From assembly GCA_002269645.1 (NCBI GenBank), contig NIVC01000504.1:206792-270791 (forward strand): 64,000 nucleotides of DNA, read 5' to 3'. Of this stretch, positions 42,825-63,758 are shown piece by piece. Both the position numbers and the translations under genes were made by a program. Each line of letters opens with the position of its first letter. Position 1 is the first letter of the stretch. The notes below the pieces were generated by a model. The model saw nothing but the letters and a program-made list of their open reading frames with translations. It ran no database searches and was not told the DNA's origin. This stretch comes from Macrostomum lignano (Eukaryota).

Positions 42825-44400
42825 TCAAGACGAATACGACTCTTCTTTTGGTAGTAAAAGCTGACCTTCATCGCTGGAAACAGCACTAACACGGCGCGTA
42901 GGTTCGACTTCACTATATTGGCTGTAGCTTTCTGCTCTCGCCTCTTCAAAGTCGACGTCATGTCCGTCGCTTTCATCGTCAACTACTCTATCAGCCGCCA
43001 TGTAGTCGCAATCATCATCAACTTCTGACAAACGCTTTACTAGTTGGACGCAAAAACAGCGATAATAAAGCATAGCCAGCGCTAACTCGACAAACATCAC
43101 CGCATAAACGATACGAAGATCATTCGACTTTCCGTACACTTGCGGGATGATAGGTCGATCTCTAGGGAACTTTGACATAATAAGTATTTTTAAACCAGTA
43201 ATGAAGCCGCTGATCGCCCAGACTGCAGACAGCAGACCCATGACAAAGCTTTTACTTGCAGCTTGTGCCACTCGGTACATCAGCTCGTAACCTGCAGCCA
43301 GTGCTAGAGCGTTGCTAATACCATATAGTACCGATGCGGTTCCGTAAACAGTGTGAATTAGTCGAGAGTCTAGAGGAGCCAAGCTTCTGACCCCTGCCCA
43401 GCTGTTCCAAACTATCATCGCACCGTTACAAAGTAATAATAGGGTAACTCCTGAGTAAAAGCGAGCATTAATGTGGCCTCGATCCTTGTTTTGTAAACAG
43501 CCGATGGAATAAGACATGGTTAATAGACCCACGGTAGCTAGTGTTGCCATGTTGTAGCCCACAAACACTTCTGCGCAACTGGTGTGGGTATGGCGTTTGC
43601 TAGTGTGATTTAAGTAGTAGTTAATTTCAAAGCAGTAATGGAAAAAACGAATTCCAAAAATGTTGTTCACTAAGAGCACAAGAGGCGCCAGTAGTAGGAA
43701 GTAGCGCAACAGACGAATCTTTGTCGGAAATTGGAATCCATCGACAAGCTGATGTTGAAAGCGACGTTGGTAGCTTCTCCAGTCGAGTCGAAGACGCAGA
43801 GAGAACACAATATAAACCAGTGGTGAGATGCAGAGGATCCAAATAAGATTTACGTAATGTCGTGTCAGCTTTATTAGCGTACCGATCAGTTCACCGAGCG
43901 ATGCCGACGCGTAGTACGCAATCAATCCAGGTGTTGGACTGCCGAGGTCGCCGTCCGAGATTTTCATAAACGATGCAATCATAAGTCCGAAACTGATGCC
44001 GTTCGCTAAGCAGTTTGGTACCAGACCGATAACGTACACTAGCTTGATGCAAATAACGCCAGCCATCTCCATTGCAGTAGTGTACACACCTGCCAATAAT
44101 AAAATTACTCCGGATATGCGCAGAAGGCGAAGCTCTCCAAACCACTTGTCAGCAATTAAACCACTTAGCGCAGTCAACAAAAATTCAATTACCGGTAGGT
44201 AAAAAAGATTAGAAAACTCGTCGCCCTTACCATGAAAGTAGCATTTTCTTGTTTTTTCGTCGAAAGAATAGTCAGAGGTGTGAATTTCTATAAAAAAAAT
44301 AGAAGCTGATTGATAGGCAGAGTCGCATGATAAACAAATTAGTCACTGTGCGGATCCAGGCCCACGAATTGTTCCTAGCAAAAAGTTCTTCCGAAGACAT
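42825..44400 (-). CDS. SLC15/POT(PTR2)-like MFS membrane protein, copy 1 (single +1 frameshift in an A8 run at ~44292-44299)
   Basis: ATG at 44400 (MSSEELFARNNSWAWIRT). Removing one base from the homopolymer joins it to ORF 42825-44180 for about 524 aa. SGLIADKWFG (PTR2-like) and GYELMYRVA..SKSFVMG (SLC15 TM10-11-like). Either a sequencing error or a young pseudogene. Confidence 0.6.
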
Positions 44401-46729
44401 CTCTGAAGCAGGGAATAAGGATGGTTTGATTGCATGTACGCATACGTCAAACGACGTAGATACATGTTAGCTACAATAAAAACTGTAAATAAATCTTTTA
44501 ACTTTTTACATCCTCACCGAAATGATTTTTATTTCGATCGTCAATAGACAACTGAGATGTGCGCTTCCGATTGCATATCCGACTTCGATAACAACTTATA
44601 TATGGCTCATTGGCGCCACATGGACTAGCATTAAATAGCAGAGCAAACAGTTGCGGATTTGCAGAAGAGGGAAATTTATGAAATATCAGTGTGGTATTTT
44701 TGCTATTTCTAAGCTTTTGAAATGCTTAAATATATGCGAGCATTGAAGTAGTACTGTAATCCGTATTTTATGCGTTTACACGAGACCAGTTATTTATTTT
44801 TAACAAATTTATCTACGTTAATCTGTACACTCAGGCTGTTGTTGCATTACGAGTATATTCTCTGCAGTAAGACCAATTAATAATGACATGTTTGATGCTT
44901 TTAGAATCGAGGGCTTTGCCTAATTGTGCATGTATTTCAGACGAGATATTCTTGAACAAAGATAAAAATACAGTAAGCATGCAGCCGCTAGTCCACTAGC
45001 TTATCTTACCCGTATTCAGTTGACCATTTGGATGGCAACTCAGAGTATCTCTTGCCACATCAATATCGAATTTTAGTTTTTCATAGCTTTACCTCTAAAC
45101 GACTACTGCGTTAGGCTGTAGCTCTCAAATAAAAAACTGCAGGTACATGCCTTAAGACTGAATAATCGGCATCTTGATTAATACTTGAAAACAAAACATT
45201 TTAAAGCTGCACTTTGGGGTATGTTAAGGACCAGTTTCTTAAAATTGGCAAGGACAGAACGCGAGGCTGTCACAAGAAACTGACAGATGGCTCGAAGTCC
45301 ATTGCAGTCCGCTTGTTTCGTTAGTTTAAATTTCAACTCTATGCATATAGTTTGTATATGCGTGCGCGTAATATACTCAATTACTCAAGTAAATTTGAAA
45401 GTGGGTCCGAACAAACTGTACATTGATTTGAGCAATCTTTGATCCGCAGAGCTACTAACGGTAAAGTATAAGCTGTCCTCAAGTTTAATCCTTGTTAATT
45501 TTGAAAAATCATGCAGTACATGTAGTTCTTAAAGGCTGTGAACTTTCGAACTTGTGAAATATGATGTTTCTGCGTTGTGAAATTTCCGGTCTCGTGAAAC
45601 CCCCTCCAAGAAAAGTCCTGGCGCATATAGATGTATAGTTAGTCACGTACGCATCGGGCTTTATTTGGAGCATATTGCATCATCGATCGTTGGAGGATAC
45701 ACTATTTGACTACTATGGGTTACCGTTCCTATATGCAATGTTAATCAGCCAACTTTGTATCAATTTAATTACGTGATAATGCAGTTCATTTATTTGTGCT
45801 TGATCAGTCATAACTACTTTTAAAATAATTATCGGTAAGAATATTCGAGCTAAGGCAGTGGAAATTTTTAGAAACAATTTTTAAGTATAAAAAGTTATTG
45901 AGAAAATTTTGCTCTCGTAAGCTAGCTCGTATATTATAGATTGAAATGAAGAAAAATAATTACAAGAGGCGCAGCAAACAATAAGCGAAAAAATATTTTA
46001 TACTTTGCGCTCGTATAGCAAAATTTATTACTCGTATATTCGTGGCACCTTGAACAAGGTCTAAATGCGATGAAGATATTTTACTTAAACATGTTAAATT
46101 TAGTTAAGCGCACGCATGGCGAACAAATTACGAGCGTAGAAATTTCTAGAAAATGACCCAACTTAGAAGTATGGAGACATACATGCGCAACCACGTCACG
46201 TGACTACTATTCCGTCTAATAGCGAATAGCCAAGCATGATAGAGAATTGAAAGTTTCAGGAATATGACAACTGTTTCCACAACATGTTAATCAGCATCTG
46301 GTTTTAGACGAAAAACTTCGAATTTTTAACAAACACGAAAAGTTTTTGATCAAATAATCAGCAAAAATCAGCACTGTTGTAAATTCACTGTTGTGAAAGC
46401 CATTTGCATTACTTCTAGCCACCCCCGTACACACCTTTTAATTGCACTGCTCCCACTGTCGGTCCCCACTCCTACGTCACGTCACGGCTGCATGGTTAAC
46501 CACCCCCTGCGCTTCTATCTGTCTTCGCCGGTCCAGAGTTTTGGGCGACACCACTCTATTGCTCAGCCTCCCTGCCCGCCAAGTTACATTAATGATGCAA
46601 TCATATTTTTCAATATAGATTTGTTCTGCAAAATTCTTCGGGTACTTATTGAGTTTTTACAAATTGACGCAAATTCGATAACCGGCCTTCAATTCCGAGA
46701 GCACCGTCGTTATAAGCTAGTAGTACATA

Positions 46730-48238
46730 TTAAATTATTGAAGCTTTAATAAGTGACTGTCGCTCCGAATTAGTGTTTCCATCGTCAGGAAGATCGACCA
46801 TCAGTTCGTGATTAGAGTCCGTATCCTGACCGATGCTGTCATAGCTTTCCTCTACTTCGAGTTCCACCATTCGCTTAGACAGCTTAACGTTCACGATGCC
46901 GTAGAACAGAATCATCATGCTTATTTCACAAACAATAATTACATAGGAAATGTAAAGCTTGTTCGACTTGCCCAGCGATGGTTTCAAAACTGGGTCATCA
47001 ACGGGATAGTGCAATAAAGCCAGCATCGTTCCACCGGCGATTGCAGCACCTACTGCCCAGATTGTGATCAGGAAGCCCATGACAAGATTCTTGCTTCCCG
47101 CTGGAGCGACACGGTACATGATTTCGTAGCCGGCCACCATGGATAAACCATTGGCAACTCCGTCTAAACAAGAAGAGGATGCGTAGACAGCGTGAACTAT
47201 CATCCCATCTGGAAGATCCTCGCCTCTACTAGCAGCCCAGTTGTTCCATGCGATCATTGCAGCTTTTGAAAGTAGCAGCAAGAAGGCTCCAGAGTAGAAG
47301 CGAGTGTTTATATGGCTTTTACTTTTGCTGATGTAGCCCATTCGATAGCATACGGCAAGTAAAATCAGTGTAGAAATTGTAGCTGAATGATAAGCGGTTG
47401 TAGACTCGGTGCAGCTGCTTTGCGAGCTGCTAAAATTTGTAGCATTACGATAGATACTTTTCTCTAGGCAGTAAAGAGCTCCAAATACACTGGCAAATAT
47501 GTTCACTAGCATAACAAGAGGTGCTAGTAGAAGAAAATAGCGAATCAAACGAGCTTGTGTCGGAAAAACGAAACCATCAGACATCTGGTGCCCGAAACGT
47601 CTTCGATAGCTGCTCCAGTCGGGGCGAAGCATGACAGATAAAGCAATGATGGGAAATGACCCAGTAATACAAATGTACCCGGTGAAAGCAGTGTTGGGTC
47701 CAAATAGTCTTGGTACCTGGCCTATAAGTCCACCCAAGCTTGCAGCAATGTAGTAGGTAATCAATCCAGGCAATTGGGTGCCAAACTGTCCGTGGGAGAT
47801 CTTCAAGGGTGCGGCCAGCAGGGGTGCCATTGCAATGCCGTTCGCAAAGCCACCGAGTATCACTCCAATGAGGTACAGCGACGGTAGGCAGATTAATTTA
47901 GCCTTCTCAACTGCCGCAATGTACACACCAGACACTAGATATATTACGCCTGAAATACACAGTACGAGCTTCTCGCTGAGCCCTCTGTCAGTTAAAAGGC
48001 CACCGAGAACAGGTAGAAAGAATTCCAGCAGATACAAGGGAATTTGGTAAACATTTGGCTCGCCTTCACTGTCTCTACTAAAGTAGCACTCTCCATTGCC
48101 TAGGTCCTGGATGTAGTCGCTTAAACGGATGTCGCTAATAGCTTGAAAGATCATCGTTGAGCACACTTTTATGACGAACAGAATCACTAGGCTAATTATC
48201 CATGAGCTGCTACCAAAACCAATGTGGTTTACAATCAT
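46730..48238 (-). CDS. SLC15/POT-like MFS membrane protein, copy 2, single coding exon, ~502 aa
   Basis: Uninterrupted ORF with roughly 11-12 hydrophobic segments; LGGLLTDR and GYEIMYRVAPAGSKNLVMG. Likely start is ATG 48238, downstream of a 5'UTR intron 48384-48264 (GAA|gtaagc ... tttcag|); the track's longer start at 48283 lies inside that intron. Confidence 0.75.
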   Translation of the reverse strand: MIVNHIGFGSSSWIISLVILFVIKVCSTMIFQAISDIRLSDYIQDLGNGECYFSRDSEGEPNVYQIPLYLLEFFLPVLGGLLTDRGLSEKLVLCISGVIYLVSGVYIAAVEKAKLICLPSLYLIGVILGGFANGIAMAPLLAAPLKISHGQFGTQLPGLITYYIAASLGGLIGQVPRLFGPNTAFTGYICITGSFPIIALSVMLRPDWSSYRRRFGHQMSDGFVFPTQARLIRYFLLLAPLVMLVNIFASVFGALYCLEKSIYRNATNFSSSQSSCTESTTAYHSATISTLILLAVCYRMGYISKSKSHINTRFYSGAFLLLLSKAAMIAWNNWAASRGEDLPDGMIVHAVYASSSCLDGVANGLSMVAGYEIMYRVAPAGSKNLVMGFLITIWAVGAAIAGGTMLALLHYPVDDPVLKPSLGKSNKLYISYVIIVCEISMMILFYGIVNVKLSKRMVELEVEESYDSIGQDTDSNHELMVDLPDDGNTNSERQSLIKASII

Positions 48239-48749
48239 TTCGACTTCTCTTAATTGATATTTCCTGAAAATCAATGATGACAAAGTATATTCAACCCAAA
48301 AAGCGAGTGAAAAAAATCCATTTTATTCGAGTCAATCAGTAGTTGGAAGGAACCATTTGGCCAAAAAGAATTAAATGTGCTTACTTCAGAGTGTTTTACG
48401 CTCGTGAATAGTTGACCACGCAGATCAAGGTGACGACTCAATTTAATAGGCACAAGCTAAGTTCAGAGCCCAACTGCAGCCGTGTAGCTCGTAGCTCAAT
48501 TTTTTATAAAATGCCGGAAAATGGAATAATTATACCTTTTATAGCAAAGACAAACTTGTCAGAAAAGTTTTTTTTTCGCGACGTACACTTAAATATGTCT
48601 ATGAGTACAATTTTCAGCCAAAGCTCGGATAGCTCGTAGTTTTCACCTGCCTCACTAGCCCAGCACAATGGAGCAAACTCTTAACATCATCACTGTACAA
48701 TAACTCAGCGTGGCCCTATGCGAGAAAGTCTTAACCAAAATTGACAATA

Positions 48750-51700
48750 AGAAAAACTTCTTCACCCGCCTGTACTCTGCTAGCCCGACTGATCGCGCCT
48801 CCTCCGAGCACGAGACTGGCTACGGAGATAATTAGGTGGACGAGCTTTGAGCAATCGGATTAGAGCTTGTCCAGTGTCAACTTCAACCATTCTCTAGCAG
48901 CCAACACGCCGCATCATGCTGTGGCTCCTGAAGACCGGTCCCCTTGGTTGGTGACGCCCAACGCGCACGGAGAACCGGACTGCAGGACACTGAACCCCTA
49001 TCTTGACTTTAAACCAGCGGTAAGATGCAGAGAATCCAAGTAAGATTTACATAAGGTCAAACGTTGTGTGGGAATTCGACGAAGACTACTGGAAGCTGAT
49101 TGCTGAGTCGGACTTGCATCAGTGGGGGTGCGAACCCCGCAGCTGTACCATCGCCACCTGAACGCTCCACGCAATCTGAAGGTCACTTTGAACCAACCCG
49201 GTATCTCGCAACCGTCTGCCTGAGCTTCAACTCACCAGCTGGCTGTCAACGGTCCAGCTGCAGGTACCGGCACGTCTGCAATTGCAAGCTGCCTGGCTGC
49301 GGCAAGCCGCATCCCGCCCAACTGCATCGTCAGAGTGGCGATGCGACGAAGGAGTAAAAAAACTAGATTTATTTTATAGCCACTATGCCTTTATCCCCCA
49401 CCCGCTCTCATCCCATTGTTTGCATCCCCTCACCCCTGCCCGTCACCCCGACCCGCCTCCCCCGCCGCATGGGGTGCTGTCTTCCGACATGAACCAGGCT
49501 TTTTGAAATCTTTTGCTACGCAACGACCCAGACGAGAAATTCCTCCGAAAAGGCCTTCATAACGGCTTCCGCCTCATCAACAAGCCTCCGTCTGCGTTCA
49601 CGCATTCTGCCAACTACCGTTCCGCTACTGACCATGCCGAGCAGGTTGACAAGCAACTCTCCGAAGAGCTCTGACTCGGCCGCTAAAAAAACTATGACGG
49701 ACGCGTCATGGTGAATGCTATCGGCGCGATCCCTAGGTCTGACGGAAGCGTTCGGATGATTCTCGATCTGTCCAGTCCTTCCGGCTCTTTGTTCAACGAC
49801 AGCTATGAGCAGGAGCTGAGTCTGAGATTCTCCTCCGTGCAGGATCGAATGCGTCACATTCGATCCGTGAATGGATCGATGCGTCAGGCCTCGTAAACGA
49901 GGCCTGGCTCGTTTATCGGCAAGGTCGATCTGAAGCAGGCCTACCGCTCTGTCGACATCCACCCGGACTATCAGGCGCTGACGAGCCTCAGCTGGCGTCT
50001 CGCAGTTGACACCGAATCCTCGGTGCTCATCGACACCCGGCTGCCATTCGGTGCCCGGGCCTATTGTTAGATCTTTCACCGTCTCTCACCCGCCATTCAT
50101 CACCACATGCTTAGGCAAGGCTTCCAAGCTATGGGTCAACTACCTGGACGACTGGGCGGTTGCCGGCGACTCTCAGGAAGCTGCTGAATGCGCTTACTAC
50201 TACCTGGTGCACCTCCTGCAGGACCTGGGCTTCACCATCAACTGGAGCAAGCCCACGGCCCCAACACAGCGGTTGGTCTTCCTCCGCGCTCAAATCGACA
50301 CAATTGACGGCACGCTGTCGCTGCCCACGGACAAGGCCGCCAGCACCAGGGATTTGCTGAAGGACTGCCTCTCCCGCGAGATCGTCAAGCTCAAGCAGCT
50401 GGAGAGGCTGGCCGGGAAGCTGTGCTGGTTGGGCCAGATCAACAAGCTGCTGCGTTCTCATCAGCGACGGTCGAGATCTCCGGCTGCCTCAAGAAGCTCG
50501 CGATCTGCTGCAATAGTGGCTGCAGGCAGTGGATTCGCTGCCACCTACGCCTCTGCACCCGCGCTTTCATCAATTGGTAGCCATCGAGTCCGACAGCAGC
50601 TCCGAAGGCGCCGCTGGCATCGTAAGCGGAACCCACTTCAACGACTGGGCGTACTTCAGCTGGGAGCACGACTTCGAGTCAGAGTTCAGAACCTCCACGT
50701 CAACCATAAGGAGCCCCTGGCTCCGCTCCTCACCATCCTGCGCTTCCACGAGCAGCTCAGCAACAGCCGGGTGGTGGTCTACTCCGACAGCACGGCTGCA
50801 GTCGGCAGGATCAACAAGCTGTCCTGCAGGCATCCATCGCTTATTCGAATCTACCAGACGGTGGCCCTCTTGTGCCTTGAGTCTGAGATCCAGCTGCAGG
50901 CGTTTCACCTTCCCGGTCACATGCAGCTCACTAGGGACTCGGCCTCGAGGGTGATGAGCTCAAAGCATGAGCTCGTGAACTTTTGCTGTCGCCACTGTGG
51001 CTCTCTGTGTGTCTATGCCACGGAGTTTGCCTCGCACACCATCTCTGCCGCGTCACGCACCACTCTTCTTTCACAGGTCGCAGCCGCGCTCCCCATCGCC
51101 CCGCCGTATCCGTGCCCATTCTGTGCCGCCTGTCGCTCGCACCCAGCACCCGGAAGTCGTATGCCAGCCACCTGAGGCTCTGGAGGGAGTTCTGTCGACA
51201 GCAGCGGGTTTCCCCCACAGCCGCATCGAAGTCGGACGTCTGCAACTTCACCGCCTTCCTCTTGGAGCGAGGCTGCGCCTCCTACTCAAGCGTGCAAACC
51301 AGCCTCAGCGCAGTGTCCTTCATCCACAGGGCGACGGCAGCACCAGACCCCACCAAGGACAACGCCCGACTGGCTCTCGTCTGCCGCGGAGCCCGACGCC
51401 AACTAAGCAGGCAGCCACGCGGGGCAGAGCTGCTGCAGCCGCATCATCTCCGCTTGCTCTGGAACAGCCCTCTGCTTCAGCAATTACTGCCCTGGCGCCT
51501 CTTCATGGCCTTCAAGGCTGCGCTGCTGGTCGCCTGGTGGGGCGTCCTTCGTCTGGGCACGCTGCTTCCGTCTACCGCTGGTTCTGCTTTGCGCTCTGGC
51601 GCGCTTTCGACCTGCCCCGGCGGCCTCCGCCTGACCATCGGCAAGTCCAAGACTTCCGCAGTGCACCTACTACCTGGTAGGTAGTAGGTGCACTGCGTAG

Positions 51701-52080
51701 GTGCACTGGTAGGTAGTTGCTCGTCTTCCTTCCGCAATGCCCCGACTACCCACCGATCTGCCCGGTCGCTGCCCTCGCCACTCATCTGTGTGAGAACCAG
51801 TTTGTCGAGCAGCAACAGCCTCTCTTCGCTGTCCTGGGCGCCCACAGAGTCCCGTTGGCTGCCTCGACCTTCATCCGCCTGCTTAAGCGGGGCCTGTCAA
51901 TATGCGGCATCCCTGAGGAAAACTTCTCAGGCCACAGTCTGCGCAGGGGCGGAGTCAGCGCCGCTACGCTGCCTTGGTGACTGGCACTCCGACTTCGTCT
52001 TCTTCTATTTCTCGGACGAGGTTAACCCTCCTGCGCTTCTCTTTCTCTCTTTGCTGGCCTTAGAGTCTTAGCTTAGAAAC
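48750..52080 (+). mobile_element. Decayed Ngaro/DIRS-group YR retrotransposon (gag Zn finger, RT, RNase H, tyrosine recombinase)
   Basis: CLSFNSPAGC..CRYRHVC..C..PHP (~49230-49330); DPDEKFLRKGLHNGFRL; GSVRMILDLS; KVDLKQAY; RLPFG; YLDD; YSDSTAA..HLPG; same-strand overlapping YR with GVLRLG, GKSKT, CPVAAL, GHSLRRGG. Several stops and frameshifts; ends approximate. Confidence 0.88.
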
Positions 52081-52189
52081 TCCCTGCGCCTATTCGACTG
52101 ATGCATGATTGATATTTATTCATCAGCAGCATATTAGGGTCTGTACACGAGCCTGGATTAGCGGGGATTTTCTCTGAGGTTCAACCGAG

Positions 52190-52635
52190 CGCATTAGACA
52201 TTACACACCAATTAATTGAGTGTGTGAAGCATGAAGTGAGAAATACGTACCCGAAAAGCAGCAAAAATACAGCGTTAAATTGATTATACAAGAATATTAT
52301 TTCCATATACATTTGGTGTCCAAAATTATTCTGTTTCTCGCACTTCTTGATTGTTACAAATTGATGCCTCCTAAACACAATCTTTTCGCACCAAATCCGA
52401 CAGCAGCCGTCCTTGTAAGCTAAAAGTACCAATTAAATTCTTGAAGTTTTAATAAGTGACTGTCGCTCCAAATTATCGTTGCCACTGACCGGATAGGGAA
52501 GATCGACCATTGGCTGGTGGTTAGAGTTCGTATCCTGGCCGATGCAGTCATAGTTTTCCTCTTCGAGTTCCATCATTCGCTTAGACAGCTTAACTTTCAC
52601 GATGCCGTAAAACAAAATCATCATGTTTATTTCAG
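52190..52635 (-). pseudogene. 3' fragment (last TM, tail and 3'UTR) of an SLC15-like paralogue close to copy 2
   Basis: MMILFYGIVKVKLSKRMMELEEENYDCIGQDTNSNH versus copy 2 MMILFYGIVNVKLSKRMVELEVEESYDSIGQDTDSNH; homology stops at ~52635. Confidence 0.85.
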
Positions 52636-52649
52636 GATTGTATTTCAGG

Positions 52650-53850
52650 ATTACTGCATCAATTAAAATTAGGAGACTGTGGTTTTCTTGCTGGCTGTTT
52701 TGAGATGGGGCCCGTCCCTGGCCAGGTGCCGGCTCGCTGCATACTGCGACAATGAGACGGCGTGTTGGATTCTAAGGCGAGGTGTCCTCAAGGACTCGCG
52801 GCTGATGTGACTGCTGCAGTCTGTTGCGTTGCTCTGTCTGCGTTTTGACGTGGACTTTGAGGTCATTCACGTTCCTGGTGCCTATCAGCTGTTTGCCAAT
52901 GCAGGGTCCCGCCTGCACTCATGTCATGAATTGCTTAATCTTATTTTCCGTGTTTATGGCTCTGTGCAAATTTGCCCTGCGGAGTTTTCGGATCACGCGT
53001 TTTCTGTCTTTGCCTCCCGTTTTTTATTTTCACTAGCCGCCTTCCGGCAACGCCGACCCTCGGCGCCGCCACCTCCGGCCTCCTCGCCGCAGCATACGCA
53101 CCGCAGTCACGCAGGGCGATCTCATCGGCCGTCCGGTCCTGGCACAGCTAATGAAACGAGACGAGAGCGGGACCAAACTAGCTCGATCCGACCAATCGGT
53201 GCTACTCAACTACCTGGCTCACCTGGTAGAATGCCGCCTGAGATCGCTCAACAGTCTGCATTTCCACGTCAGTGCACTGTCTAGCTGGTTCAAAGCCTGT
53301 GGTGCTGAGGACCTAACAAGACACCACCTGCTCTCACTGCTCATTCGCGGCGCTAGACGGAAGATGGGCCAGCGACCAAGACGGAAGCTGCGGATCTCGC
53401 CTGCGATGTTGCTGCTTGTGAAGAACCGGCTCAATTCGAGCAGTTTGCTTGATAGAGTCTGCTGGCTTGTGACGCTGATTGGTTGTTGGGGGATGTTTCG
53501 GCGCTCCAGTCTCCTGCCCAGCCAGCAGTCCGCTTCACCGATCTCTGTCTCAGCCTTTCAACGCCCCCCGAAGGCGGTTGTGTTCTCCGTCAGTTACATG
53601 TATGGCAAGACGAACCAGTTCGGCGCGATCAGAGGCTGCACCGAGTGTTGTTTCCAAGACTGAAAGAAGGACATCCGCGTTGCCCGTCGGTCGCGCTAGA
53701 GAGTCACCTCGGTGCCAACAAGCTTGGTGGCAGGCAACCTATGTTTTCCTATCAGTTGGCGAACAAAGTTTTGCTTCGGGTGCATCACCTAGCTTTTCGT
53801 TGCCTTGCCCTCGTCACATCCGGTTTGTCTTTGCCTCCCCTTCACTAATG
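52650..53850 (+). mobile_element. Second Ngaro/DIRS fragment (RNase H end plus tyrosine recombinase), truncated
   Basis: DFEVIHVPG..ANAGSR; ORF 53151-53663 with LLNYLAHL, HVSALSSWF, GARR, GCWGMFRRSSL, GKTNQFG; CPSVAL in a shifted frame. Confidence 0.8.
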
Positions 53851-54847: not shown

Positions 54848-56476
54848 TTAAACCGAATTGATCGGCATACATCGGCATTGTTGCGTATCCACTCTTCGTC
54901 CAGACGAATACGACTCTTCTTTTGGTAGTAAAAGCTGACCTTCATCGCCCGAAACGGCACTAGCACAGCTCGTGGGTCCGACTTCACTATTTTGTCTGTA
55001 GCTTTCTGCTCTCGCCTCTTCAAAGTCGACGTCATGTCCGTCGCTTTCATCGTCAACTACTCTATCAGCCGCCATGTAGTCGCAATCATCATCAACTTCT
55101 GACAAACGCTTTACTAGTTGGACGCAAAAACAGCGATAATAAAGCATAGCCAGCGCTAACTCGACAAACATCACCGCATAAACGATACGAAGATCATTCG
55201 ACTTTCCGTTCACTTGCGGGATGATAGGTCGATCTCTAGGGAACTTTGACATAATAAGTATTTTTAAACCAGTAATGAAGCCGCTGATCGCCCAGACTGC
55301 AGACAGCAGACCCATGACAAAGCTTTTACTTGCAGCTTGTGCCACTCGGTACATCAGCTCGTAACCTGCAGCCAGTGCTAGAGCGTTGCTAATACCATAT
55401 AGTACCGATGCGGTTCCGTAAACAGTGTGAATTAGTCGAGAGTCTAGAGGAGCCAAGCTTCTGACCCCTGCCCAGCTGTTCCAAACTATCATCGCACCGT
55501 TACAAAGTAATAATAGGGTAACTCCTGAGTAAAAGCGAGCATTAATGTGGCCTCGATCCTTGTTTTGTAAACAGCCGAGGGAATAGAACACGGTTAATAG
55601 ACCGAAGGTAGCTAGTGTTGCTATGTTGTAGCCCACAAACACTTCTGCGCAACTGGTGTGAGTAGTGTGTTTTTTCGTGCAATTTAGGTAGTAGTTAATC
55701 TCAAAGCAATAGTGGAAACCACGTACGCCCATACAATTGTTTACTAAGAGCACAAGAGGTGTCAGCAGTAGGAAGTAGCGCAACAGCCGAGTCTTTGTCG
55801 GAAATTGAAATCCATCGACAAGCTGATGTTGAAAGCGACGTTGGTAGCTTCTCCAGTCGAGTCGAAGACGCAGAGAGAACACAATATAAACCAGCGGTGA
55901 GATGCAGAGGATCCAAGTAAGATTAATGTAATGCCGCGTCAGCTTTATTAGCGTACCGATCAGCTCACCGAGCGACGCCGACGCGTAGTACGCAATCAAT
56001 CCAGGTGTTGGACTGCCGAGGTCGCCGTCCGAGATTTTCATAAACGATGCAATCATAAGTCCGAAACTGATGCCGTTCGCTAAGCAGTTTGGTACCAGAC
56101 CGATAACGTACACTAGCTTGATGCAAATAACGCCAGCCATCTCCATTGCAGTAGTGTACACACCTGCCAATAATAAAATTACTCCGGATATGCGCAGAAG
56201 GCGAAGCTCTCCAAACCACTTGTCAGCAATTAAACCACTTAGCGCGGTCAACAAAAATTCAACTAAGTATACAGGTATGTTAACAAAGTTTGAGAACTCG
56301 TCGCCTTCACCATGAAAGTAGCATTTTCCTGTTTTATCGTCAAAAAAATAATCGGAGATGTGGATATCTCTGAAAATATTGAAACTGATTGATAGACACA
56401 GTCGCATGATAAACAAATTAGTTATTGTGCGGATCCAGGCCAACGATTTACTGTTAACAAGTTCTTCAGAAGACAT
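54848..56476 (-). CDS. SLC15/POT-like MFS membrane protein, copy 3, single coding exon, ~542 aa
   Basis: Uninterrupted ORF; likely start MSSEELV at 56476 after the acceptor ttttttcag|agATG; near-identical to copy 1 over most of its length. Confidence 0.78.
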   Translation of the reverse strand: MSSEELVNSKSLAWIRTITNLFIMRLCLSISFNIFRDIHISDYFFDDKTGKCYFHGEGDEFSNFVNIPVYLVEFLLTALSGLIADKWFGELRLLRISGVILLLAGVYTTAMEMAGVICIKLVYVIGLVPNCLANGISFGLMIASFMKISDGDLGSPTPGLIAYYASASLGELIGTLIKLTRHYINLTWILCISPLVYIVFSLRLRLDWRSYQRRFQHQLVDGFQFPTKTRLLRYFLLLTPLVLLVNNCMGVRGFHYCFEINYYLNCTKKHTTHTSCAEVFVGYNIATLATFGLLTVFYSLGCLQNKDRGHINARFYSGVTLLLLCNGAMIVWNSWAGVRSLAPLDSRLIHTVYGTASVLYGISNALALAAGYELMYRVAQAASKSFVMGLLSAVWAISGFITGLKILIMSKFPRDRPIIPQVNGKSNDLRIVYAVMFVELALAMLYYRCFCVQLVKRLSEVDDDCDYMAADRVVDDESDGHDVDFEEARAESYRQNSEVGPTSCASAVSGDEGQLLLPKEESYSSGRRVDTQQCRCMPINSV

Positions 56477-57724
56477 CTCTGAAAAAAGAAAATAATGATG
56501 ATTTGATTGATGTACGTACATGTAAAGAACGTAGGTAGCGACAAAAAAATTAAAATAAATTCTGAAACTTCGTACATCTCACCGTTAGTAGTTTTTTAAT
56601 TTGATTATCAATAGTAGGCAGTAATTATGTGCGCTTCTGATTTCATGCCAGACTTCTACAAAGACTTATATAGGGCTCATTTTCGCTACATGAAGTTATA
56701 TAGATGTTGACTAGCATTAAATACAGCTGCACCGTTTATCTTCTGTACCGATTAGATTAGGCAAGTATATGGCAGACCAAACAACTGCGGTTGTATAGAG
56801 ATGAAAATTTATATACGTGCAATATCAGCTAGGGTGGTATTTTTGCCATTTCGAAACTTTTGCAATGCTTAAATTTATAAATACTACTGTAATCCGTATT
56901 TTTATGCGTTTACAGGAGGCCAGATAATTTTTTTAAAATAATAAACATTTACATGCACATAACATAGCTGCCGTTGCATTTTAATCTACAGCAAGATTAA
57001 TCAATAATAACACATAGGATGCTATTTTTGAAAACAAGATACGAAATAGCTGTGCTAACTTTAGTCACTAGCTTATCTTACCTGTACATTCAATTGTCAG
57101 TATCGGCATGAGTATCATTTCGGCTGAACGTCGGTGCAATGTAAAACAACAATTTTACAGCGAAGTTGAACACATCGACCGAAGCCGCTGACATTGAATA
57201 GCTGTACGGCGAAATGCTGTACATTTGTAAATCATTTGTAATATTATATTAAAAAATGCTATGTATGAGATCTTCATAGCTTAAGTTTTAACAGTTTAAT
57301 TATAGTAAAGTAAGGCCTTGGGTTATATTTTTCCTTCTAGACGATAGCAAAGACAAGTACTGGCGCCTATACGTGTAGTATAATAGCTTATCTACAGAAA
57401 CTAGGCACCAGTTGGAGCAGATGATGTAAATCTTTGAAGGATAAGCTCTATTGACTACTATGGGTTCCTAAACGTACTGTAAAAATCAGCTAACTTTGTA
57501 TTACTTAAATTTCTTGTATGTAACTATGCGTTCTGTGAATTCATGACACACAATTCATGCTTAATTAGTGAATATCAGAATTTATTTTACGATTGATAAA
57601 TTCAATACGATTGTCGGTAAAATTATCGAGAAAATGTGGTGGTAGTTTCTTTTCTAATGGTTATAAAAAATTCTTGATAAACTTTTTTAGCTTGAGATTT
57701 ATATTCATGAGCCTGAGCCTGAGA

Positions 57725-59450
57725 GCCTGAGTATGGACAGTCAGCTTTGCCTCGCGAGCACTGTCCGACACCGAGCGCCGCTACTCTGCGTCGGAAAAGG
57801 ATGCTGTGGCTTGCTTCTGGAGCTCCGAGCATTGGCACCTGTTGCTTTACGGTCGGAAGTTCAAGCTTCTCACCGACCATCAAGCGCTGTAGACCCTGCT
57901 GTCACCTCGAGGAGTCAGCCAACGACCTCTTTGGCTTCAGCGCAGGTGCCAGCGACTCTTCGTCTACGACTTCGACATCGAGTACGTCCCCGGAAAGCTC
58001 AACGTAAAGCCCGACTTTCTGTCTCGCTACGGCTACGACGGCAAGAGCGTAGCCAACGAGTCCAACGAGCAGCACCAGAGCGAGTCCGACATCAACCTGG
58101 TGCTGGCCAGAAGCGCCGAGCCGATCTCAGTCACTCAACTGGCCGATGCAACCAAGAGCGACAACCAACTGCAGCGAGTCATCGGGTACCTCCATCAACC
58201 GATGGCCAGCCGAAGTTCCAACCGACCTGAAGGGCTTCTACCAGGTGCAACACTAGCTATTTCTGTAGAACGATGGTTACTGCCTGACGAGAGGCGGCCG
58301 AGCCATCATCCCGACTGACCTCCGCGACCTTGTGCTGGCAGAGGCGCATTAAGGACATCTAGGCGTCGCCAAGGTCAATTCACGGTGCTGCGATACGGTC
58401 TGGTGGCCGGGAATTGACAGCGACGTGAAGGCCTTCGTGGGGAGTGGGGAACTGCAGCGCCTGCGTCCTGTCTGAGAAGGCGTTCAAGCAGATCAAGGTC
58501 CCATGGTCAGCGACGGAGCTACCGGCAGGTCTATGGCGGCAGCTGCAAGTCGATATCGTTGGAGAGCTGCCGGAAGCCAATGTGCCGCAGTCCCATCGAT
58601 TTTTCATCGTCGTTCTCGGTCTCTACTCCAAGTGGCCTGAGATCATCGCATCTTCATCCGTGACTTCCACTGCCTCCCTTCGCAGCCTGTTCGTCCGCTG
58701 GGGGCTTCCAGACGAAATTACCACGGACAACAGACCTCAGTTTGTGTCGACCGAGTTCACAGACTTCCTCAGCTCGCTCAGCATCAAGCACCATCGCACT
58801 CCGTTCTACTGCTCACGGCAGAATGGCGGAGTCGAGAAGTTCAATGGCTTCATCAAGACCTCACTGCGCGCACTACACGCCGACGGTGTGCCAGTGAAGC
58901 AGGCGGTTCAGGAGCTGCTGCTAGCGTATCGATCATCTGAGCACGCGCTGACCAAGAAGTCTCCGGCTGAACTGATGCTGGGACGGAAGCTCCGCCTGCC
59001 TCTCAGTCGTCTTCAACCAGCAAGCACCGAGTCAACGACGGACCAGGAGCTGCGGCGTAGCGTCACGGAGCGACAGCAGCAGGCCAAGAGCCGCCGCCGG
59101 ATGCGCAAGCAGAACCAGCCACTGACGGACGCAGCGTTGACTGTCGAGAGCCGCGTCCGCCGGCCGAGCCGTGGAAAGCCCAGCAGTGGCGTCTCCGAGC
59201 CTGTCGCGAGGGCAACACAATCACTCTGATCGATGGCAGTCGCTGGTACATCAGCCGCTGCATCCTGGATGACCACCACGGCTGGAGTGACGGGCCGACG
59301 ACACAGAGGCTCCGGGAAAGCTGGACGGCGGACAACCAGAGGCGGTTCAGCCAACGCCACCGCTGCACGCTCTGAGAGACTTCGTGCACCGCCTGAATGA
59401 TTCGGCGACGTTGTGACTCATGATTGACTGACTTGACTGACTGCTCATGC
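57725..59450 (+). mobile_element. Ty3/Gypsy pol fragment (RNase H plus integrase), decayed
   Basis: FASRALSDTERRYSASEK, LTDHQAL, FDIEYVPGKLN..DFLSR; Zn finger AH.GHLG..WWPG..C..C; LQVDIVG, ITTDNRPQF, QNGGVEKFN; in-frame stops and shifts. Confidence 0.92.
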
Positions 59451-62234
59451 ACCGAAAAATGTTCCATTGACATTGCTTGCTTTAATGCGTTGGCTTATCC
59501 CACCCCGTAATCTGTCATCTCTTTGCACGGGTGGATGATTTTGTGAATGTGCATGCTCAATGACAATATGTAATTTACGCGCACTGATGTACATCTACGA
59601 GTATCAGTCAAATAATATATATATATTGACTAGCTCACTAGCTGAGAGCTACCTCTGCTCTCCTCTCCTTCGTCTCAAGTGAATTGATTTTATTCATTTG
59701 GCCAGCGGCCACAACAGTGGCGCTTTCAGCATCCCCATTGGTGCTGAAGACTTACGCTCTATGTGCGCTGAGACATGACTTCCAGTTTCAAGCTTTGCTG
59801 AGATGCTGGTAGATGCTACTGTTTCTGCTTCGCTTCTTTGGCCATACAGTACAGAATTTGATGCACGATTCCAAGCATAATGCGAGTATACGATTACAGA
59901 TAATACATATACTACGGGCTGACCCAACAAACCATTTTATCGGACAGGAAGAACTCTAAGAACTCTATAAGAACTCTTGTGCCTTCACATCAGTGCTGAA
60001 AGTCCGGCCTCATAAAAATATCTCTTCAGTGAAGTCTTTGTAGCTTGAATGAACCTCGCAGTTTGTCCACTTCATCCTAATTTTACTGGAAGTGGTGGAA
60101 CAGCGTAAATATCTCACAATTTGTGAGAAAAGGAGCTACGTAACCTTGCCTTAAATCGCTCAGAGAGCATAAAATGGGAAAACCCCATGATGTCATGATT
60201 AGAATCAGAAGATGTGCGCACTTTTGGAAGTTGTCTGGAAGAGGCGCGGCACTCGTAAAATAGTCTGGCATGAGCGCGCACTATTAGTAGGGTCAAGACT
60301 GGCTTGAGGAAAGCAACCAGAGTTGTTCTGATGGCCAGCTCTTTTAGTCGTTGTATTGAATTTGAAATAGAGACGTCGATCTATTTTCCAAATAAGATGC
60401 CTGCGGCTGCGTCAGCGGTGTAAAGGTGCTTCATACAACAACAAAATAAAAAAAAAACGCGTATTAAGGCAGTCACGCGAGTCATGAGAGGCAAAAACAA
60501 CGTCACAGGGCGTTGATGGAATCATGGAATTCATGGAATTCATGGAATCGAATATTGAGCACTGCTGACTTTGGCTGCTGTCATTTGCCTGTGAATATTT
60601 CAAGAGTGGTGATCAGTAACTCAAAATTCCCACTTCCAGACCGTGAGTCTGGGAACAGAATTTAGTGTTCACTTACTATAGCGGGCTCCTCTTCAATTGT
60701 AATTCAAGCTGCAGTCGCGCACTGAGGGTACTCCTTGTCGATTCTGAAGTCGGCCGAATACGAGAGCAACTTTAATAATCGTAACAGTTTAATCCGCCGC
60801 CATTAAAGTGTTCCTTGTGATTAGTAATCAAAATCGTAGATGCGTCCTAATAATCAGTTTATAATAATATCAAGGTCCTCCGGAAAGGGGCGTCTTCATC
60901 TAGAAAAATCGGAATCGGAGTCGTGTGCCCTTATCTGTTAATCTAGGGTACCAAAATCAATCAAATCAATAATCGTCTAAGAGTGTCTGAATCGATCCCG
61001 TGGATCCCATCCAATCCCTTAGGAATAGGGAGGCCTCAAATTCAATTACTGAGTAGAAATAAACTTATCAATAACGGCCGGCAATGACTCAAGCTCTCGA
61101 TAATCAAATAACAAAGATGACGTCGAAGGCTTACCGATCGGTATGACTTTCCCTCGGAGATACACTGTATGGTCCTGATTGACTCGTCAGGTCGCTCTGA
61201 GTCTAGAGAAACTGCTTTGAGTCTCTTTGGGCCTCTCGAGTCTGAGATTTCAGCTCGGATTTTTGGCTCGTATTTATAGGTGAATCTTGCGAGAATAAGG
61301 TCATTTTTCGAGGAGGTGACGAGTTCAATTTTTTGGAATTTGACCATTTGACAGTTGAATCGAAATCAAGCGAATACAATAGATCTCCGGGCATTATTTA
61401 CCTTTTGGGGTCGTGATTCGTTGTATATATTTGAGGTAATATTCATTGGTTCATCTCTTGCGTTATAAATAGTATAGTATCATGCATGATTCAAGCTTTT
61501 AAATTCTACTCCAGTATTAGTCTTACTCTACTTACAGTAGCATTTTATGCACGTGTCTTTCTATACCTGCGTGCTTGTGCATAGCATAAGACTATTATAG
61601 ATGGACTTCAGTCTACTATAGCTGGTTTTGGTGGCACAGCCGCAAAGTTCGTGTTCGCTTTTTTAGGGCAATTCAACCGACTGAAGTATTGTAAATCATG
61701 CTTTTGTAGCTCGTACTTGAAAGCAATGCTTTGAAAAAAAGTGCCGAGCGCACATCTAATACGATCTCTGCGGGCTTCTTGCTTACTGTTTAAAATTCCA
61801 CAATAGAGACATTAATATCATTTGGCAGCAGTCAACTACTGTTCAGACTGTGACTAGGAAGCTCCCGCCTAGAACCTCTTGGCCTCTCGCTGAACAACAC
61901 GTCGTTACCGTGCCATCGAGAACGCAAAAAACGAAGTTGATAAAATGCGATTGAAGTTTTTTATACGCTTGTATCGTTGTTGATAATGTCTCGAATAACA
62001 TAAAAATGTATTAATGTGTCTAAGCAGCACTTTAGGAGACACGAGCCTATTATCATACCATCTAGAATCTAGAATCTAAAGTCATTTAGACTAATGAAGC
62101 AAGTTTTAGAAAACCAGAAAAAACGATCAAAATTACAAAGTTGGAAATAAGACATCGTGTGGTTAAAGTTATGTACGTCCTGCTTATTACTGTCAGATTG
62201 TAAGTCAAACTTGTCTCGAATGCCACAACTGAAC

Positions 62235-63758
62235 TTACAAACTGTTCGAACTTCTCTCGGGTGCTTCGTCAACCTCGTCACCATTAGCGCTGCTGACGTA
62301 GCGCTGGTAATCCAGGCCATTCAATTCCCTGCTGTCATTTTCGCTGTCACATTCGCTGGCTTCTTCACTGCAGTAGTCATCGAACTCAAGCATGCGTGCA
62401 GCTATTTTCGTGCTCACGCAACCGTAGTACAGAAGCAAAAAAACTGTCTCGACCACCATCACTACGTAGGACACCCAAAGATTGTTTGATTTACCCCAAA
62501 CTGGTTTAAGAATAGGCTGATTGTAAGGAATTTCCATCATAGATAATATAGTAACGCCAGCGATACTTGTGCCAACTGCCCAGATTGTGAATAGGAATCC
62601 CATGACTAAATTCTTGCTTCCAGCCGGTGCCACTCTGTACATGAGCTCGTAGCCCGCAACCAGAGCCAGAGCGTTGCTAATTCCATCCAGAGCGGATGCA
62701 GTTGCGTAGACGTTGTGAACCATTTGCGGATTCGGCGGCAAGAGATCATCTTCCATGGCAGCCCAGCAATTCCAGGCAATCAAAGCTACTCGGCAGAGTA
62801 GCAGCAAGAACACTCCAGAATAAAAACGGGCACTGATATGACCATTTTTGCTGTTCAAATAGCCAAGCTGAAAGCATACGACAAGCATAACCAGCGTAGA
62901 AATAGTTCCCGCATTGTATCCGATGAAAATCTCGGAGCAATTACTGCTGGTAGAGTTTTCTGTGGTACGATTCAAATAGAAATTTATCTCTTGACAGTAC
63001 AGACCACCGCGCACGAAACTGATAACGTTAACAAGTAGCACAAGCGGTGCTAGTAGCAAAAGTAGCGCAACAACGAGCTTTAGTAGGAAATAGGAAACCA
63101 TCAGACGCCTGGTGACGAACTCGGTGCAGATAGCTGCTCCAGTCGAGTCGAAGCAGAATGGATGCCGCTATTTGTACCAACGGCGGAATGCAGAATGCCC
63201 AGGTCAGATTGACAGAAGGTCGAATTATCCTCGGCAGTAAGCCAATTAACTCGCCAAGAGAAGCGGCTAGGTAATAAACTATCAGGCCGGGAATCGGACT
63301 ACCGATCTGTCCGAATGTGAGTTTCTGAGGCGCTGCAAGCATTGAAGCGACTCCGATACCATTGGCAAGACAGCCGGGCAGGAGACCGAAGAGGTACACC
63401 CACGTATGCAGATGAGTCCGGCCATCTCGACAGCGACAAAGTAAACAGCAGCTAGCAGTAATACGGCGCTAGAAATGCGCAGTAGAAGCAGCTCGCAAAG
63501 CCACTTATCAGCAACGAGACCGCCGAGAGCTGGCAGAAAGAATTCAATTATATACACTGAAATTAAGTATTTGTACATTTCTCCCTCGCTTCCTCCTTGG
63601 AAGTGACATCTTCCAGTCTCGGCGTCCTGCACGTAGTCGGTGATGCGAACGTCTCTCATGGCATTGAACGTTATGGTCGTGCACAATCGCATGATGAATA
63701 GTATTAGTAGGCTGTGCTTCCAAGTACACGAGGCGTTGTTAACAAAGTTGGAGATCAT
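62235..63758 (-). pseudogene. SLC15/POT-like copy 4, broken by two 1-nt deletions (or sequencing errors)
   Basis: Three consecutive ORFs (63758-63282, 63399-63028, 63101-62235) tile a full-length paralogue; frame shifts near 63405 (ICI-cg-WVYLFG) and 63075 (TKAR-tg-LRYF). Confidence 0.7.

What the first reader, a model, noticed from the sequence alone, without database searches (positions are those of the whole stretch)
42825..63758. Tandem cluster of divergent SLC15/POT-like genes lacking the proton-coupling motif: possible transceptor or chemosensor family
Seen: four full-length paralogues and one fragment on one strand, each with a single coding exon, conserved extracellular Cys (KCYF/ECYF/RCHF; YCxE...SC/NC) and N-glycosylation sequons. 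Established: POT transporters use a TM1 ExxER/K motif, a TM4 Lys and a TM10 Glu for H+/peptide symport. Seen: TM1 reads LFIMRLC / LFVIKVC (no acidic residues), the TM4 region reads ANGISF / ANGIAM / ANGIGV (no Lys), while the TM10 Glu (GYE) is kept. Inference: a lineage-specific expansion that may have lost proton coupling and act as facilitators, scaffolds or ligand sensors, evolving by birth and death like receptor gene arrays.
Basis: partly seen in the sequence, partly recalled or inferred. Interest (0 to 1): 0.72.

Follow-up and report, generated by a model that had tools for sequence, protein, structure and literature searches.

The report
Divergent flatworm POT-like transporter gene cluster
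A flatworm (Macrostomum lignano) contig carries a tandem array of single-exon genes for 12-helix membrane proteins; they descend from the peptide-transporter (POT/SLC15) family but have lost every charged residue that family uses to bind peptides and protons, so they probably carry something else, and nothing supports the suggested sensor role.

Summary
The cluster is real. Four full-span copies and one C-terminal fragment lie on the minus strand at 42,825-63,758. Only B (46,730-48,238) and C (54,848-56,476) are open. A has one 1-nt indel and D has three, all in or beside T or G runs. These may be pseudogenes or residual PacBio errors.

The window is the last 64 kb of Macrostomum lignano contig NIVC01000504.1. 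Single sequences hit no Pfam family. A window-only profile scored against 1.84 billion representative proteins found only seven: five from M. lignano, one unnamed Logan contig, and one that is the window's own copy-D ORF. The 12-row family profile hits only POT/SLC15/NPF chains in the PDB (E down to 1.3e-6). hhalign gives 96.9% against E. coli DtpA-D and 0.2-2.2% against non-POT MFS.

Residue mapping confirms loss of ExxER and the TM4 Lys. Paralogue P0006 keeps NxxER-YY, KP and that Glu, so the loss is derived.

dN/dS is 0.2-0.36.

Best reading: a non-proton-coupled, non-peptide carrier, like plant NPF2a. The transceptor or chemosensor idea is untested. Novelty is moderate.

The parts
42825..44400 (-). 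Copy A: full-span paralogue, 92% aa and 86% nt identical to C. Disrupted as assembled by a +1 nt indel in a T8 run at 44,288-44,302. Also has a 6-nt in-frame deletion near 44,190 and a stop 17 codons earlier than C.
   Evidence: dN/dS to C = 0.36; 11 versus 4 assignable aa changes on the A versus C branch
44403..44413 (-). Polypyrimidine + CAG acceptor-like site 2 nt upstream of A's ATG
46730..48238 (-). Copy B: intact ORF, 502 aa from Met 48,238, about 12 hydrophobic helices. It is the window copy closest to out-paralogues P0002 and P0003.
48264..48274 (-). Acceptor-like TTGATTTTCAG 25 nt upstream of B's ATG
52274..52634 (-). Fragment: B-like last 67 codons (52,436-52,633; 75% aa identity) plus 3' flank (77% nt identity to 46,583-46,928). 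The rest of the copy is replaced by retroelement sequence.
54848..56476 (-). Copy C: intact ORF, 542 aa from Met 56,476, about 12 hydrophobic helices
56479..56492 (-). Acceptor-like TTTTCTTTTTTCAG 2 nt upstream of C's ATG. Could be an SL trans-splice site or a 5'-UTR intron acceptor; this is inferred.
   Evidence: 38.8% of M. lignano genes are trans-spliced (PMC5730564)
62235..63758 (-). Copy D: full-span paralogue, 48-50% aa identical to B and C. Read in three frames because of 1-nt deletions at about 63,400, about 63,072 and about 63,058. Lies 242 nt from the contig end.
63790..63799 (-). Acceptor-like CTTCTTTCAG 31 nt upstream of D's ATG

Best explanation
The locus is a DNA-level tandem array of single-coding-exon genes. 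They encode proteins of about 500 aa with 12 predicted helices. These proteins form the most derived branch of a small, very divergent offshoot of the POT/SLC15/NPF family, so far seen only in Macrostomum.

The proteins keep the parts of a POT that make the rocker-switch work:
- the TM2-3 'GGxxAD..G' motif;
- the TM5 'YYxxxxxG' motif;
- the TM10-11 'AGYE....AP..SK..VMG' gating segment, including the TM11 Lys.

Every charged or polar residue that canonical POTs use to hold a peptide's two termini and to couple protons has been replaced (rat PepT2 numbering):
- E53 to R/K
- E56 to L/S/T
- R57 to S/T
- K161 to F/M/V
- N192 to S
- E622 to N

They therefore almost certainly do not perform H+/di-tripeptide symport. 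Most likely they are carriers (uniporters or exchangers) for a different small solute. Plant NPF2a members took the same route: they lost ExxER, sit in chromosomal clusters, and transport nitrate or chloride passively.

A positionally conserved C-terminal [DE]xxxL[LI] motif suggests adaptor-dependent sorting, for example to an endolysosomal membrane.

Shown: homology, residue losses, purifying selection, gene layout. Inferred: transport mode, substrate class, localisation, trans-splicing.
For: Homology to POT:
- Family profile A3 against PDB sequences: the best 23 hits are all POT/SLC15/NPF (4lep 1.3e-6, SLC15A4 1.7e-6, PepT2 5.2e-6, NRT1.1 5.6e-6).
- hhalign A3 against DtpA-D: 96.9%, E 1.7e-10 over 321 columns.
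- Single DtpA-D sequences score 71-94%; LacY, GlpT, XylE and MdfA score 0.2-2.2%.

Derived loss: paralogue P0006 keeps 'NLLERSVYY' (TM1), 'GFCKP' (TM4) and Glu at the canonical TM10 position. P0006 alone hits NRT1.1 at 3.8e-5. P0003 keeps that Glu and the TM4 Pro.

Residue map: with residue roles taken from PMC8386928.

Constraint: dN/dS is 0.36 for A-C and about 0.2 for B-D; pN is about 0.3 against saturated pS. B and C are intact.

Topology: 12 hydrophobic segments. The conserved Cys residues and NxT sequons fall in the predicted outward loops TM1-2 and TM7-8.

Sorting motif: [DE]xxxL[LI] lies 5-15 residues from the C-terminus in A, B, P0003, P0004 and P0005. In C it is 26-32 residues from the end, because C's ORF runs 17 codons past A's stop.

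Precedents: the NPF2a clade lacks ExxER, is clustered and transports passively (PMC6288477). MFSD1 is a POT-like-fold lysosomal uniporter without ExxER (PMC10990142).
Against: There are no functional, expression or localisation data.

Both AlphaFold2 attempts failed (pLDDT 38 and 34), so the fold and the cavity are not modelled.

No single sequence reaches Pfam's PTR2 threshold.

TM7 and TM8 could not be aligned with confidence, so the equivalents of D317 and N348 are unknown.

Two of four copies are disrupted as assembled.

An acidic residue one helical turn before the lost TM10 Glu (D in B and D, Y in A and C), the new TM1 R/K, and a clade-specific TM2 Glu could together form an alternative coupling site.

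The dileucine motif has a 3-47% chance of arising in any one shuffled tail.
Confidence: 0.6

Rival explanations
1. Non-transporting receptor, transceptor or scaffold. The POT fold would be kept as a ligand-gated conformational switch or an adaptor platform, as NRT1.1 senses nitrate, with the tandem array evolving like a chemoreceptor family.
For: Complete loss of the canonical binding dipole and coupling residues. A tandem array containing disrupted copies, a fragment and transposable elements. Long acidic cytoplasmic tails that could dock partners. NRT1.1 is described as a transceptor in the title and abstract of PMC3950950.
Against: The family is small: four copies here and about five other lineages in the genome. 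That is unlike chemoreceptor arrays. The gating motifs are conserved, which a pure scaffold would not need. There are no expression data. Known POT transceptors still transport.
Confidence: 0.12
2. Still an ion-coupled transporter, possibly even of peptides or amino-acid derivatives, using a rebuilt charge network. Candidate residues are the TM1 R/K at the E53 position, a TM2 Glu specific to the window clade, and the TM10 Asp one helical turn above the lost Glu.
For: The basic residue at the E53 position is conserved in all members except P0006. An acidic residue at TM10 -4 is conserved in most members. 'VEF' occurs in TM2 of all window copies. E. coli DtpC and DtpD already deviate (QxxEY) yet are annotated as H+ symporters.
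Against: R57, K161, N192 and E622 are each described as critical or strictly conserved for peptide binding (PMC8386928), and all four are gone. A and C also lack the TM10 -4 acid (Tyr).
Confidence: 0.1
3. A decaying, functionless gene cluster: pseudogenes or genes on the way out.
For: A and D are frameshifted as assembled and a fragment is present. The A branch carries more amino-acid changes than the C branch, 11 versus 4. The exact B and C protein sequences are absent from the public protein collection, so the genes may be unannotated. No canonical poly(A) signal lies within 200 nt of the stops.
Against: B and C are open over 502 and 542 codons. dN/dS is 0.2-0.36. Motifs, Cys residues and sequons are conserved across copies that are saturated at synonymous sites. 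All four indels lie in or beside T or G runs in a PacBio-based, Pilon-polished assembly.
Confidence: 0.08
4. Member of a different MFS family that merely resembles POT in a few motifs.
For: Pfam PTR2 is not reached. The only Pfam trace in a window copy is MFS_1 at E 0.97. UniProt labels relatives only as 'MFS domain-containing'.
Against: No non-POT MFS structure appears among the PDB hits, even at E up to 10. The hhalign controls are negative. P0006 carries three POT signature motifs in register.
Confidence: 0.03

Closest known systems
Plant NPF2a / NPF7 subfamilies of the NPF (POT) family
   Same: POT-fold proteins that lost the chargeable residues of ExxER/K. NPF2a genes are clustered on one chromosome by recent duplication, and characterised members are passive nitrate or chloride transporters (PMC6288477).
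   Different: The plant proteins mostly keep the TM4 Lys - TM10 Glu pair and are recognisable by Pfam PTR2. The flatworm proteins have also lost K161, N192 and E622, carry a basic residue at the first Glu position, are about 100 aa shorter, and are undetectable by Pfam.
SLC15A3 / SLC15A4 (endolysosomal animal POTs)
   Same: Among the best PDB matches (SLC15A4 8cni, E 1.7e-6). They share the TM10-11 'AG(L/Y)E...AP..(K)..MG' segment and the TM2-3 GGxxAD motif. The flatworm tails carry a dileucine-type sorting motif. That SLC15A3/4 are endolysosomal and use dileucine signals is from my own knowledge, not tested here.
   Different: SLC15A3 and SLC15A4 are canonical proton-coupled POTs; that they keep ExxER and the TM4 Lys is from my own knowledge. 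In the SLC15A4 alignment the chain has Glu at the canonical TM10 position, where the window copies have Asn.
SLC15A1 / SLC15A2 (PepT1 / PepT2) and bacterial POTs (PepTSo2, DtpA-D)
   Same: Homologous over TM1-TM6 and TM10-TM12 (PepT2 7nqk residues 42-234 aligned at E 5.2e-6; 4lep at 1.3e-6; DtpA-D hhalign 96.9%).
   Different: The flatworm proteins have no extracellular Ig-like domain between TM9 and TM10 (PepT1/2) and no HA/HB helices (bacterial POTs). Their TM6-7 linker is about 28 aa. All peptide-binding and proton-coupling residues are replaced.
MFSD1 (lysosomal dipeptide uniporter)
   Same: A 12-TM protein with a POT-like fold, no ExxERFxYY, no HA/HB helices, and uniport (PMC10990142). 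It is an example of what a POT-like cavity does without proton coupling.
   Different: Not detectably related by sequence here: no MFSD1 chain appears among the PDB hits at E up to 10.

Membership tests
POT / PTR2 / SLC15 / NPF (Pfam PF00854) | Statistically significant and specific sequence-profile similarity to POT proteins | tested here: met
   A3 profile against PDB: the best 23 hits are all POT, E 1.3e-6 to 0.04. hhalign against DtpA-D: 96.9%, E 1.7e-10. Non-POT MFS controls: 0.2-2.2%.
POT / PTR2 / SLC15 / NPF (Pfam PF00854) | Single sequence passes Pfam PTR2 gathering score (27 bits) | tested here: not met
   No PTR2 hit for any window copy. The best among relatives is P0006 at 15.2 bits, E 0.0099.
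POT / PTR2 / SLC15 / NPF (Pfam PF00854) | TM1 ExxER/K(F)xYY motif | tested here: not met
   Aligned to PepT2 E53-F-C-E56-R57, the window copies read R-L-C-L-S (C), K-V-C-S-T (B) and R-L-C-T-T (D). YY becomes FN or FQ. P0006 keeps N-L-L-E-R-S-V-Y-Y. Only 62% of plant NPFs keep the motif, so it defines function rather than ancestry.
POT / PTR2 / SLC15 / NPF (Pfam PF00854) | TM4 Lys (GxGxxKP; PepT2 K161) | tested here: not met
   ANGISFG, ANGIAMA and ANGIGVA against GNGLFKP (4lep) and GTGGIKP (7nqk). There is no basic residue for 11 positions after the Gly. P0006 has GFCKP.
POT / PTR2 / SLC15 / NPF (Pfam PF00854) | PTR2_2 motif FYxxINxG on TM5 (Tyr188, Asn192) | tested here: inconclusive
   YYASASLGE, YYIAASLGG and YYLAASLGE. 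The Tyr and Gly are kept; the Asn is replaced by Ser.
POT / PTR2 / SLC15 / NPF (Pfam PF00854) | Canonical TM10 Glu (PepT2 E622 / NRT1.1 'GIGEAL'), 16 residues before the Pro of the AP motif | tested here: not met
Asn in all four window copies (GISNAL, GVANGL). Glu is kept in P0003 and P0006.
POT / PTR2 / SLC15 / NPF (Pfam PF00854) | TM2-3 loop motif GGxxADxxxG | tested here: met
   LSGLIADKWFG, LGGLLTDRGLS and LGGLVADKWLC aligned to GGWVGDKILG, GAAIADSWLG and GGFIADTFLG.
POT / PTR2 / SLC15 / NPF (Pfam PF00854) | Proton-coupled di/tripeptide (or nitrate) transport | not testable with these tools
   Needs an uptake or electrophysiology assay.
Major facilitator superfamily (12-TM, two 6-helix bundles) | 12 transmembrane helices in a 6+6 arrangement with an MFS fold | tested here: inconclusive
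   12 hydrophobic segments or helices by hydropathy and by DSSP of low-confidence models. AF2 pLDDT was 34-38, so the fold is not established. Pfam MFS_1 gives E 0.97. UniProt tags P0002, P0004 and P0006 as 'MFS domain-containing'.
   An exhaustive search of 1.84 billion representatives found seven proteins in all, about six lineages, all of the named ones from M. lignano. The window holds four copies and one fragment.
   No expression data are reachable. The gene IDs of relatives are absent from the searchable literature.

The most novel reading that the evidence does not exclude
An animal-lineage POT-fold clade has been stripped of its entire peptide and proton site and re-armed with a new intramembrane charge pair (TM1 Arg/Lys plus TM2 Glu). 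It works either as a carrier for a new substrate class or as a non-transporting sensor or scaffold in a flatworm-specific cell type.
Probability: 0.12. Interest if true: 0.6.

Novelty: new variant of a known kind. Interest (0 to 1): 0.36.

Why it matters
POT/SLC15 transporters are usually regarded as conserved proton/peptide symporters. The well-studied exceptions that lost proton coupling are plant NPFs.

Here an animal lineage shows a graded series within one genome. P0006 still carries xxxER, KP and the TM10 Glu. P0003 keeps only part of that set. The window copies have none. This is a natural experiment in how the POT binding site can be dismantled while the gating scaffold stays under selection.

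The genes are too divergent for Pfam, and the exact B and C proteins are missing from the public protein collection. They also illustrate annotation blind spots in flatworm genomes.

The practical impact is modest unless a substrate or phenotype is found.

Tried and rejected
1. Pfam on single copies gave nothing. phmmer of copy C against PDB gave only noise, PLK4 at E 0.3.

2. The search for homologous proteins was run three times: with C, with alignment A3, and with trimmed P0006. It returned nothing except the window's own ORF. It did not even return proteins that were rows of the query alignment. This is a limit of its word index, not evidence of absence, and it also prevented building a deeper alignment that AlphaFold would be allowed to use.

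pLDDT was 38 and 34, so no Foldseek search was run.

4. hhalign could not place TM7-TM8 with confidence because of the bacterial HA/HB insertion. The D317 and N348 equivalents are left open.

5. Retroposition as the origin of the A/C duplicate is rejected. The 86% nt identity extends about 330-460 bp upstream of the ATG, past the acceptor-like site, and about 85-130 bp downstream.

6. No canonical AATAAA or ATTAAA lies within 200 nt of any stop. This is uninformative.

7. Literature searches for Macrostomum plus peptide transporter, for SLC15 plus flatworm, and for the relatives' gene IDs found nothing relevant.

8. tblastn with P0002-P0007 found no further hidden family members in the window.


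Full report
**What is there.**

ORF listing and tblastn with the two longest ORFs show five related pieces.
- Copy A: 42,825-44,400.
- Copy B: 46,730-48,238.
- A C-terminal fragment: 52,436-52,633. Its nucleotide similarity to B's 3' flank runs on to 52,274.
- Copy C: 54,848-56,476.
- Copy D: 62,235-63,758.

B (502 aa from the first Met) and C (542 aa) are uninterrupted.

A is 92% identical to C in protein. It is 86% identical in DNA over about 2.2 kb that includes several hundred bp upstream of the ATG. It changes frame once, at an extra base in a T8 run at 44,288-44,302.

D must be read in three frames. It has single-base deletions at about 63,400 (in GGG), about 63,072 and about 63,058 (in TTTT).

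All four indels lie in or next to T or G runs. The assembly is PacBio/Canu polished with Pilon (PMC5730564). I therefore cannot tell pseudogenes from residual assembly errors.

So 'four full-length paralogues' is only partly right: two are open as assembled.

**The copies are real, constrained genes.**

B, D and the A/C pair are 41-50% identical in protein and saturated at synonymous sites. pN is about 0.3. dN/dS is about 0.2 for B-D and 0.36 for the young A-C pair.

Hydropathy, and the helices of the otherwise unusable AlphaFold models, give 12 membrane segments.

They fall in the TM1-2 and TM7-8 loops. For an MFS protein with its N-terminus inside the cell, these loops face outward or into a lumen.

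Each copy has a polypyrimidine tract plus CAG 2-31 nt upstream of its ATG. 38.8% of M. lignano genes are SL trans-spliced and the average gene has 4.9 introns. I read these sites as trans-splice or 5'-UTR acceptors in front of an unusual single coding exon. That is an inference.

The A/C similarity runs past this acceptor, so that duplication happened at the DNA level and not by retroposition.

**Where it comes from.**

The 288-aa ORF of copy D is on record on contig NIVC01000504.1 of GCA_002269645.1, and the window ends at the contig end. NIVC is the Mlig_3_7 assembly of the flatworm Macrostomum lignano. The array may continue beyond the contig.

**Relatives.**

No window copy hits any Pfam family.

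An exhaustive HMMER search was run with a profile built from the window copies alone, against 1.84 billion representative proteins. It found only seven proteins:
- D's own ORF.
- Five M. lignano proteins: P0002-P0006, 469-736 aa, E 4e-34 to 3e-8. They are named only 'hypothetical', 'uncharacterized' or 'MFS domain-containing'.
- One unnamed Logan contig (P0007).

These relatives are 17-26% identical to the window copies. The exact B and C protein sequences are not in the collection. No paper in the searchable library mentions these genes or flatworm SLC15-like expansions.

**Family assignment.**

The window-only profile hit PDB sequences only weakly, but those weak hits were POT proteins: NRT1.1 at E 0.024, plus SLC15A4 and SLC15A3.

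Adding the five M. lignano paralogues and P0007 (alignment A3) sharpened the result:
- The best 23 PDB sequences are all POT/SLC15/NPF proteins: PepTSo2 1.3e-6, SLC15A4 1.7e-6, PepT2 5.2e-6, NRT1.1 5.6e-6, plus YePEPT, DtpA, SLC15A3 and PepT1.
- No other MFS family appears, even at E up to 10.
- hhalign against an alignment of E. coli DtpA-D gives 96.9% probability and E 1.7e-10 over 321 columns.
- Against single sequences, DtpA-D score 71-94%. LacY, GlpT, XylE and MdfA score 0.2-2.2%.

**Residue map.** Residue roles are taken from the rat PepT2 structure paper, PMC8386928.

- *TM1.* This segment aligns to PepT2 residues 42-64 with high posterior probability.
  - E53-F-C-E56-R57 corresponds to R-L-C-L-S in C, K-V-C-S-T in B and R-L-C-T-T in D.
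  - Both Glu residues and the peptide-C-terminus-binding Arg are gone.
  - The first Glu is replaced by a conserved basic residue.
- *TM4.* GNGLFKP (PepTSo2) and GTGGIKP (PepT2) correspond to ANGISFG, ANGIAMA and ANGIGVA. There is no Lys.
- *TM5.* FYxxINxG corresponds to YYxxxSLG. The Asn has become Ser.
- *TM10.* The alignments to NRT1.1 and SLC15A4 and the P0006-to-NRT1.1 alignment all agree.
  - They put the canonical Glu ('GIGEAL', 'FSEIF') opposite Asn in GISNAL/GVANGL.
  - The fixed 16-residue spacing from the canonical Glu to the Pro of the 'AP' motif fits this register.
- *Retained.* The GGxxAD motif, the 'AP..SK..VMG' segment with the TM11 Lys, and the TM5 Tyr and Gly.

**The loss is derived.**

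P0006 reads 'NLLERSVYY' in TM1, 'GFCKP' in TM4 and 'AAAEAL' in TM10. On its own it hits NRT1.1 at 3.8e-5, PepTSo2 at 6e-4 and PepT2 at 1.5e-3. P0003 keeps the TM10 Glu and the TM4 Pro.

The clade therefore started from a canonical POT site. The window copies are the most stripped branch.

**Mechanism.**

R57, K161, N192 and E622 make the dipole and hydrogen bonds that hold a peptide's termini. The ExxER Glu residues carry the coupling proton. With all of them replaced, H+/peptide symport is very unlikely.

The scaffold is under purifying selection and keeps its gating motifs. I therefore favour a working carrier for another solute, without canonical proton coupling.

The closest precedent is plant NPF2a: no chargeable ExxER residues, genes clustered by recent duplication, passive nitrate or chloride transport (PMC6288477). 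MFSD1 shows that a POT-like fold without ExxER can act as a lysosomal uniporter (PMC10990142).

A [DE]xxxL[LI] motif sits 5-15 residues from the C-terminus in A, B, P0003, P0004 and P0005, in tails that are otherwise unalignable. In C the same motif lies 26-32 residues from the end, because its ORF runs 17 codons past A's stop. This hints at adaptor-mediated sorting. The per-tail chance of the motif is 3-47%, so it is only a lead.

The transceptor or chemosensor idea is not excluded. Its only support is the loss of transport residues, and the family is small.

**What failed.**
- The word-indexed homologue search returned nothing useful in three tries.
- TM7-8 could not be aligned reliably.

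**Verdict.**

This is a real, lineage-restricted and strongly diverged POT-derived gene cluster. The function is unknown; it is most likely a non-proton-coupled carrier.

It is a new variant of a known kind and of moderate interest.

Noticed in passing
window 2,081-27,463: About 25 kb is almost entirely minisatellite arrays with periods of 15-61 nt. One example is 18,857-23,648, a 61-nt unit repeated 79 times at 94% identity. The arrays have strong strand composition skew and produce long spurious ORFs. This fits the 15% tandem-repeat content reported for M. lignano.
   Followed up: partly
window 27,507-30,563 (-): Exons of a glucose-6-phosphate dehydrogenase gene (G6PD_C, E 1e-50). A 20-nt tandem repeat lies in an intron at 29,725-30,083.
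   Followed up: partly
window 861-2,043 (-): Exons of a short-chain dehydrogenase/reductase gene (adh_short, E 1e-15).
   Followed up: partly
window 31,551-32,390 (+): A 279-aa ORF with Phage_integrase and DUF3504 matches: a Crypton- or DIRS-like tyrosine recombinase.
   Followed up: partly
window 49,516-53,663: GC-rich block (up to 61% GC) between copies B and C. It carries overlapping plus-strand ORFs, one with a Phage_int_SAM_4 domain (50,983-51,684), and looks like the remnant of a tyrosine-recombinase retroelement. It abuts the B-like gene fragment and probably destroyed that copy.
   Followed up: partly
window 57,733-59,229 (+): Retroviral-type integrase core (rve, E 1e-7) in a 55% GC block between copies C and D: a piece of an LTR retrotransposon.
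   Followed up: no
window 54,848-54,898 and 42,825-42,827: C's ORF runs 17 codons (GRRVDTQQCRCMPINSV) past the point where A has TGA (GGA in C). Either C gained a tail by losing its stop, or A gained a premature stop.
   Followed up: no
copies A-D, TM2 (e.g. C residue E73, 'LVEFLL'): A membrane-embedded Glu in TM2 is conserved in all four window copies and absent from P0002-P0006 (A, R, R, A, G). Together with the TM1 Arg/Lys at the former E53 position it could form a new charge pair specific to this clade.
   Followed up: no
window 37,827-38,282 (-): A 151-aa ORF whose sequence looks, by eye, like a degraded mariner/Tc1-type transposase C-terminus. No profile search was run on it.
   Followed up: no
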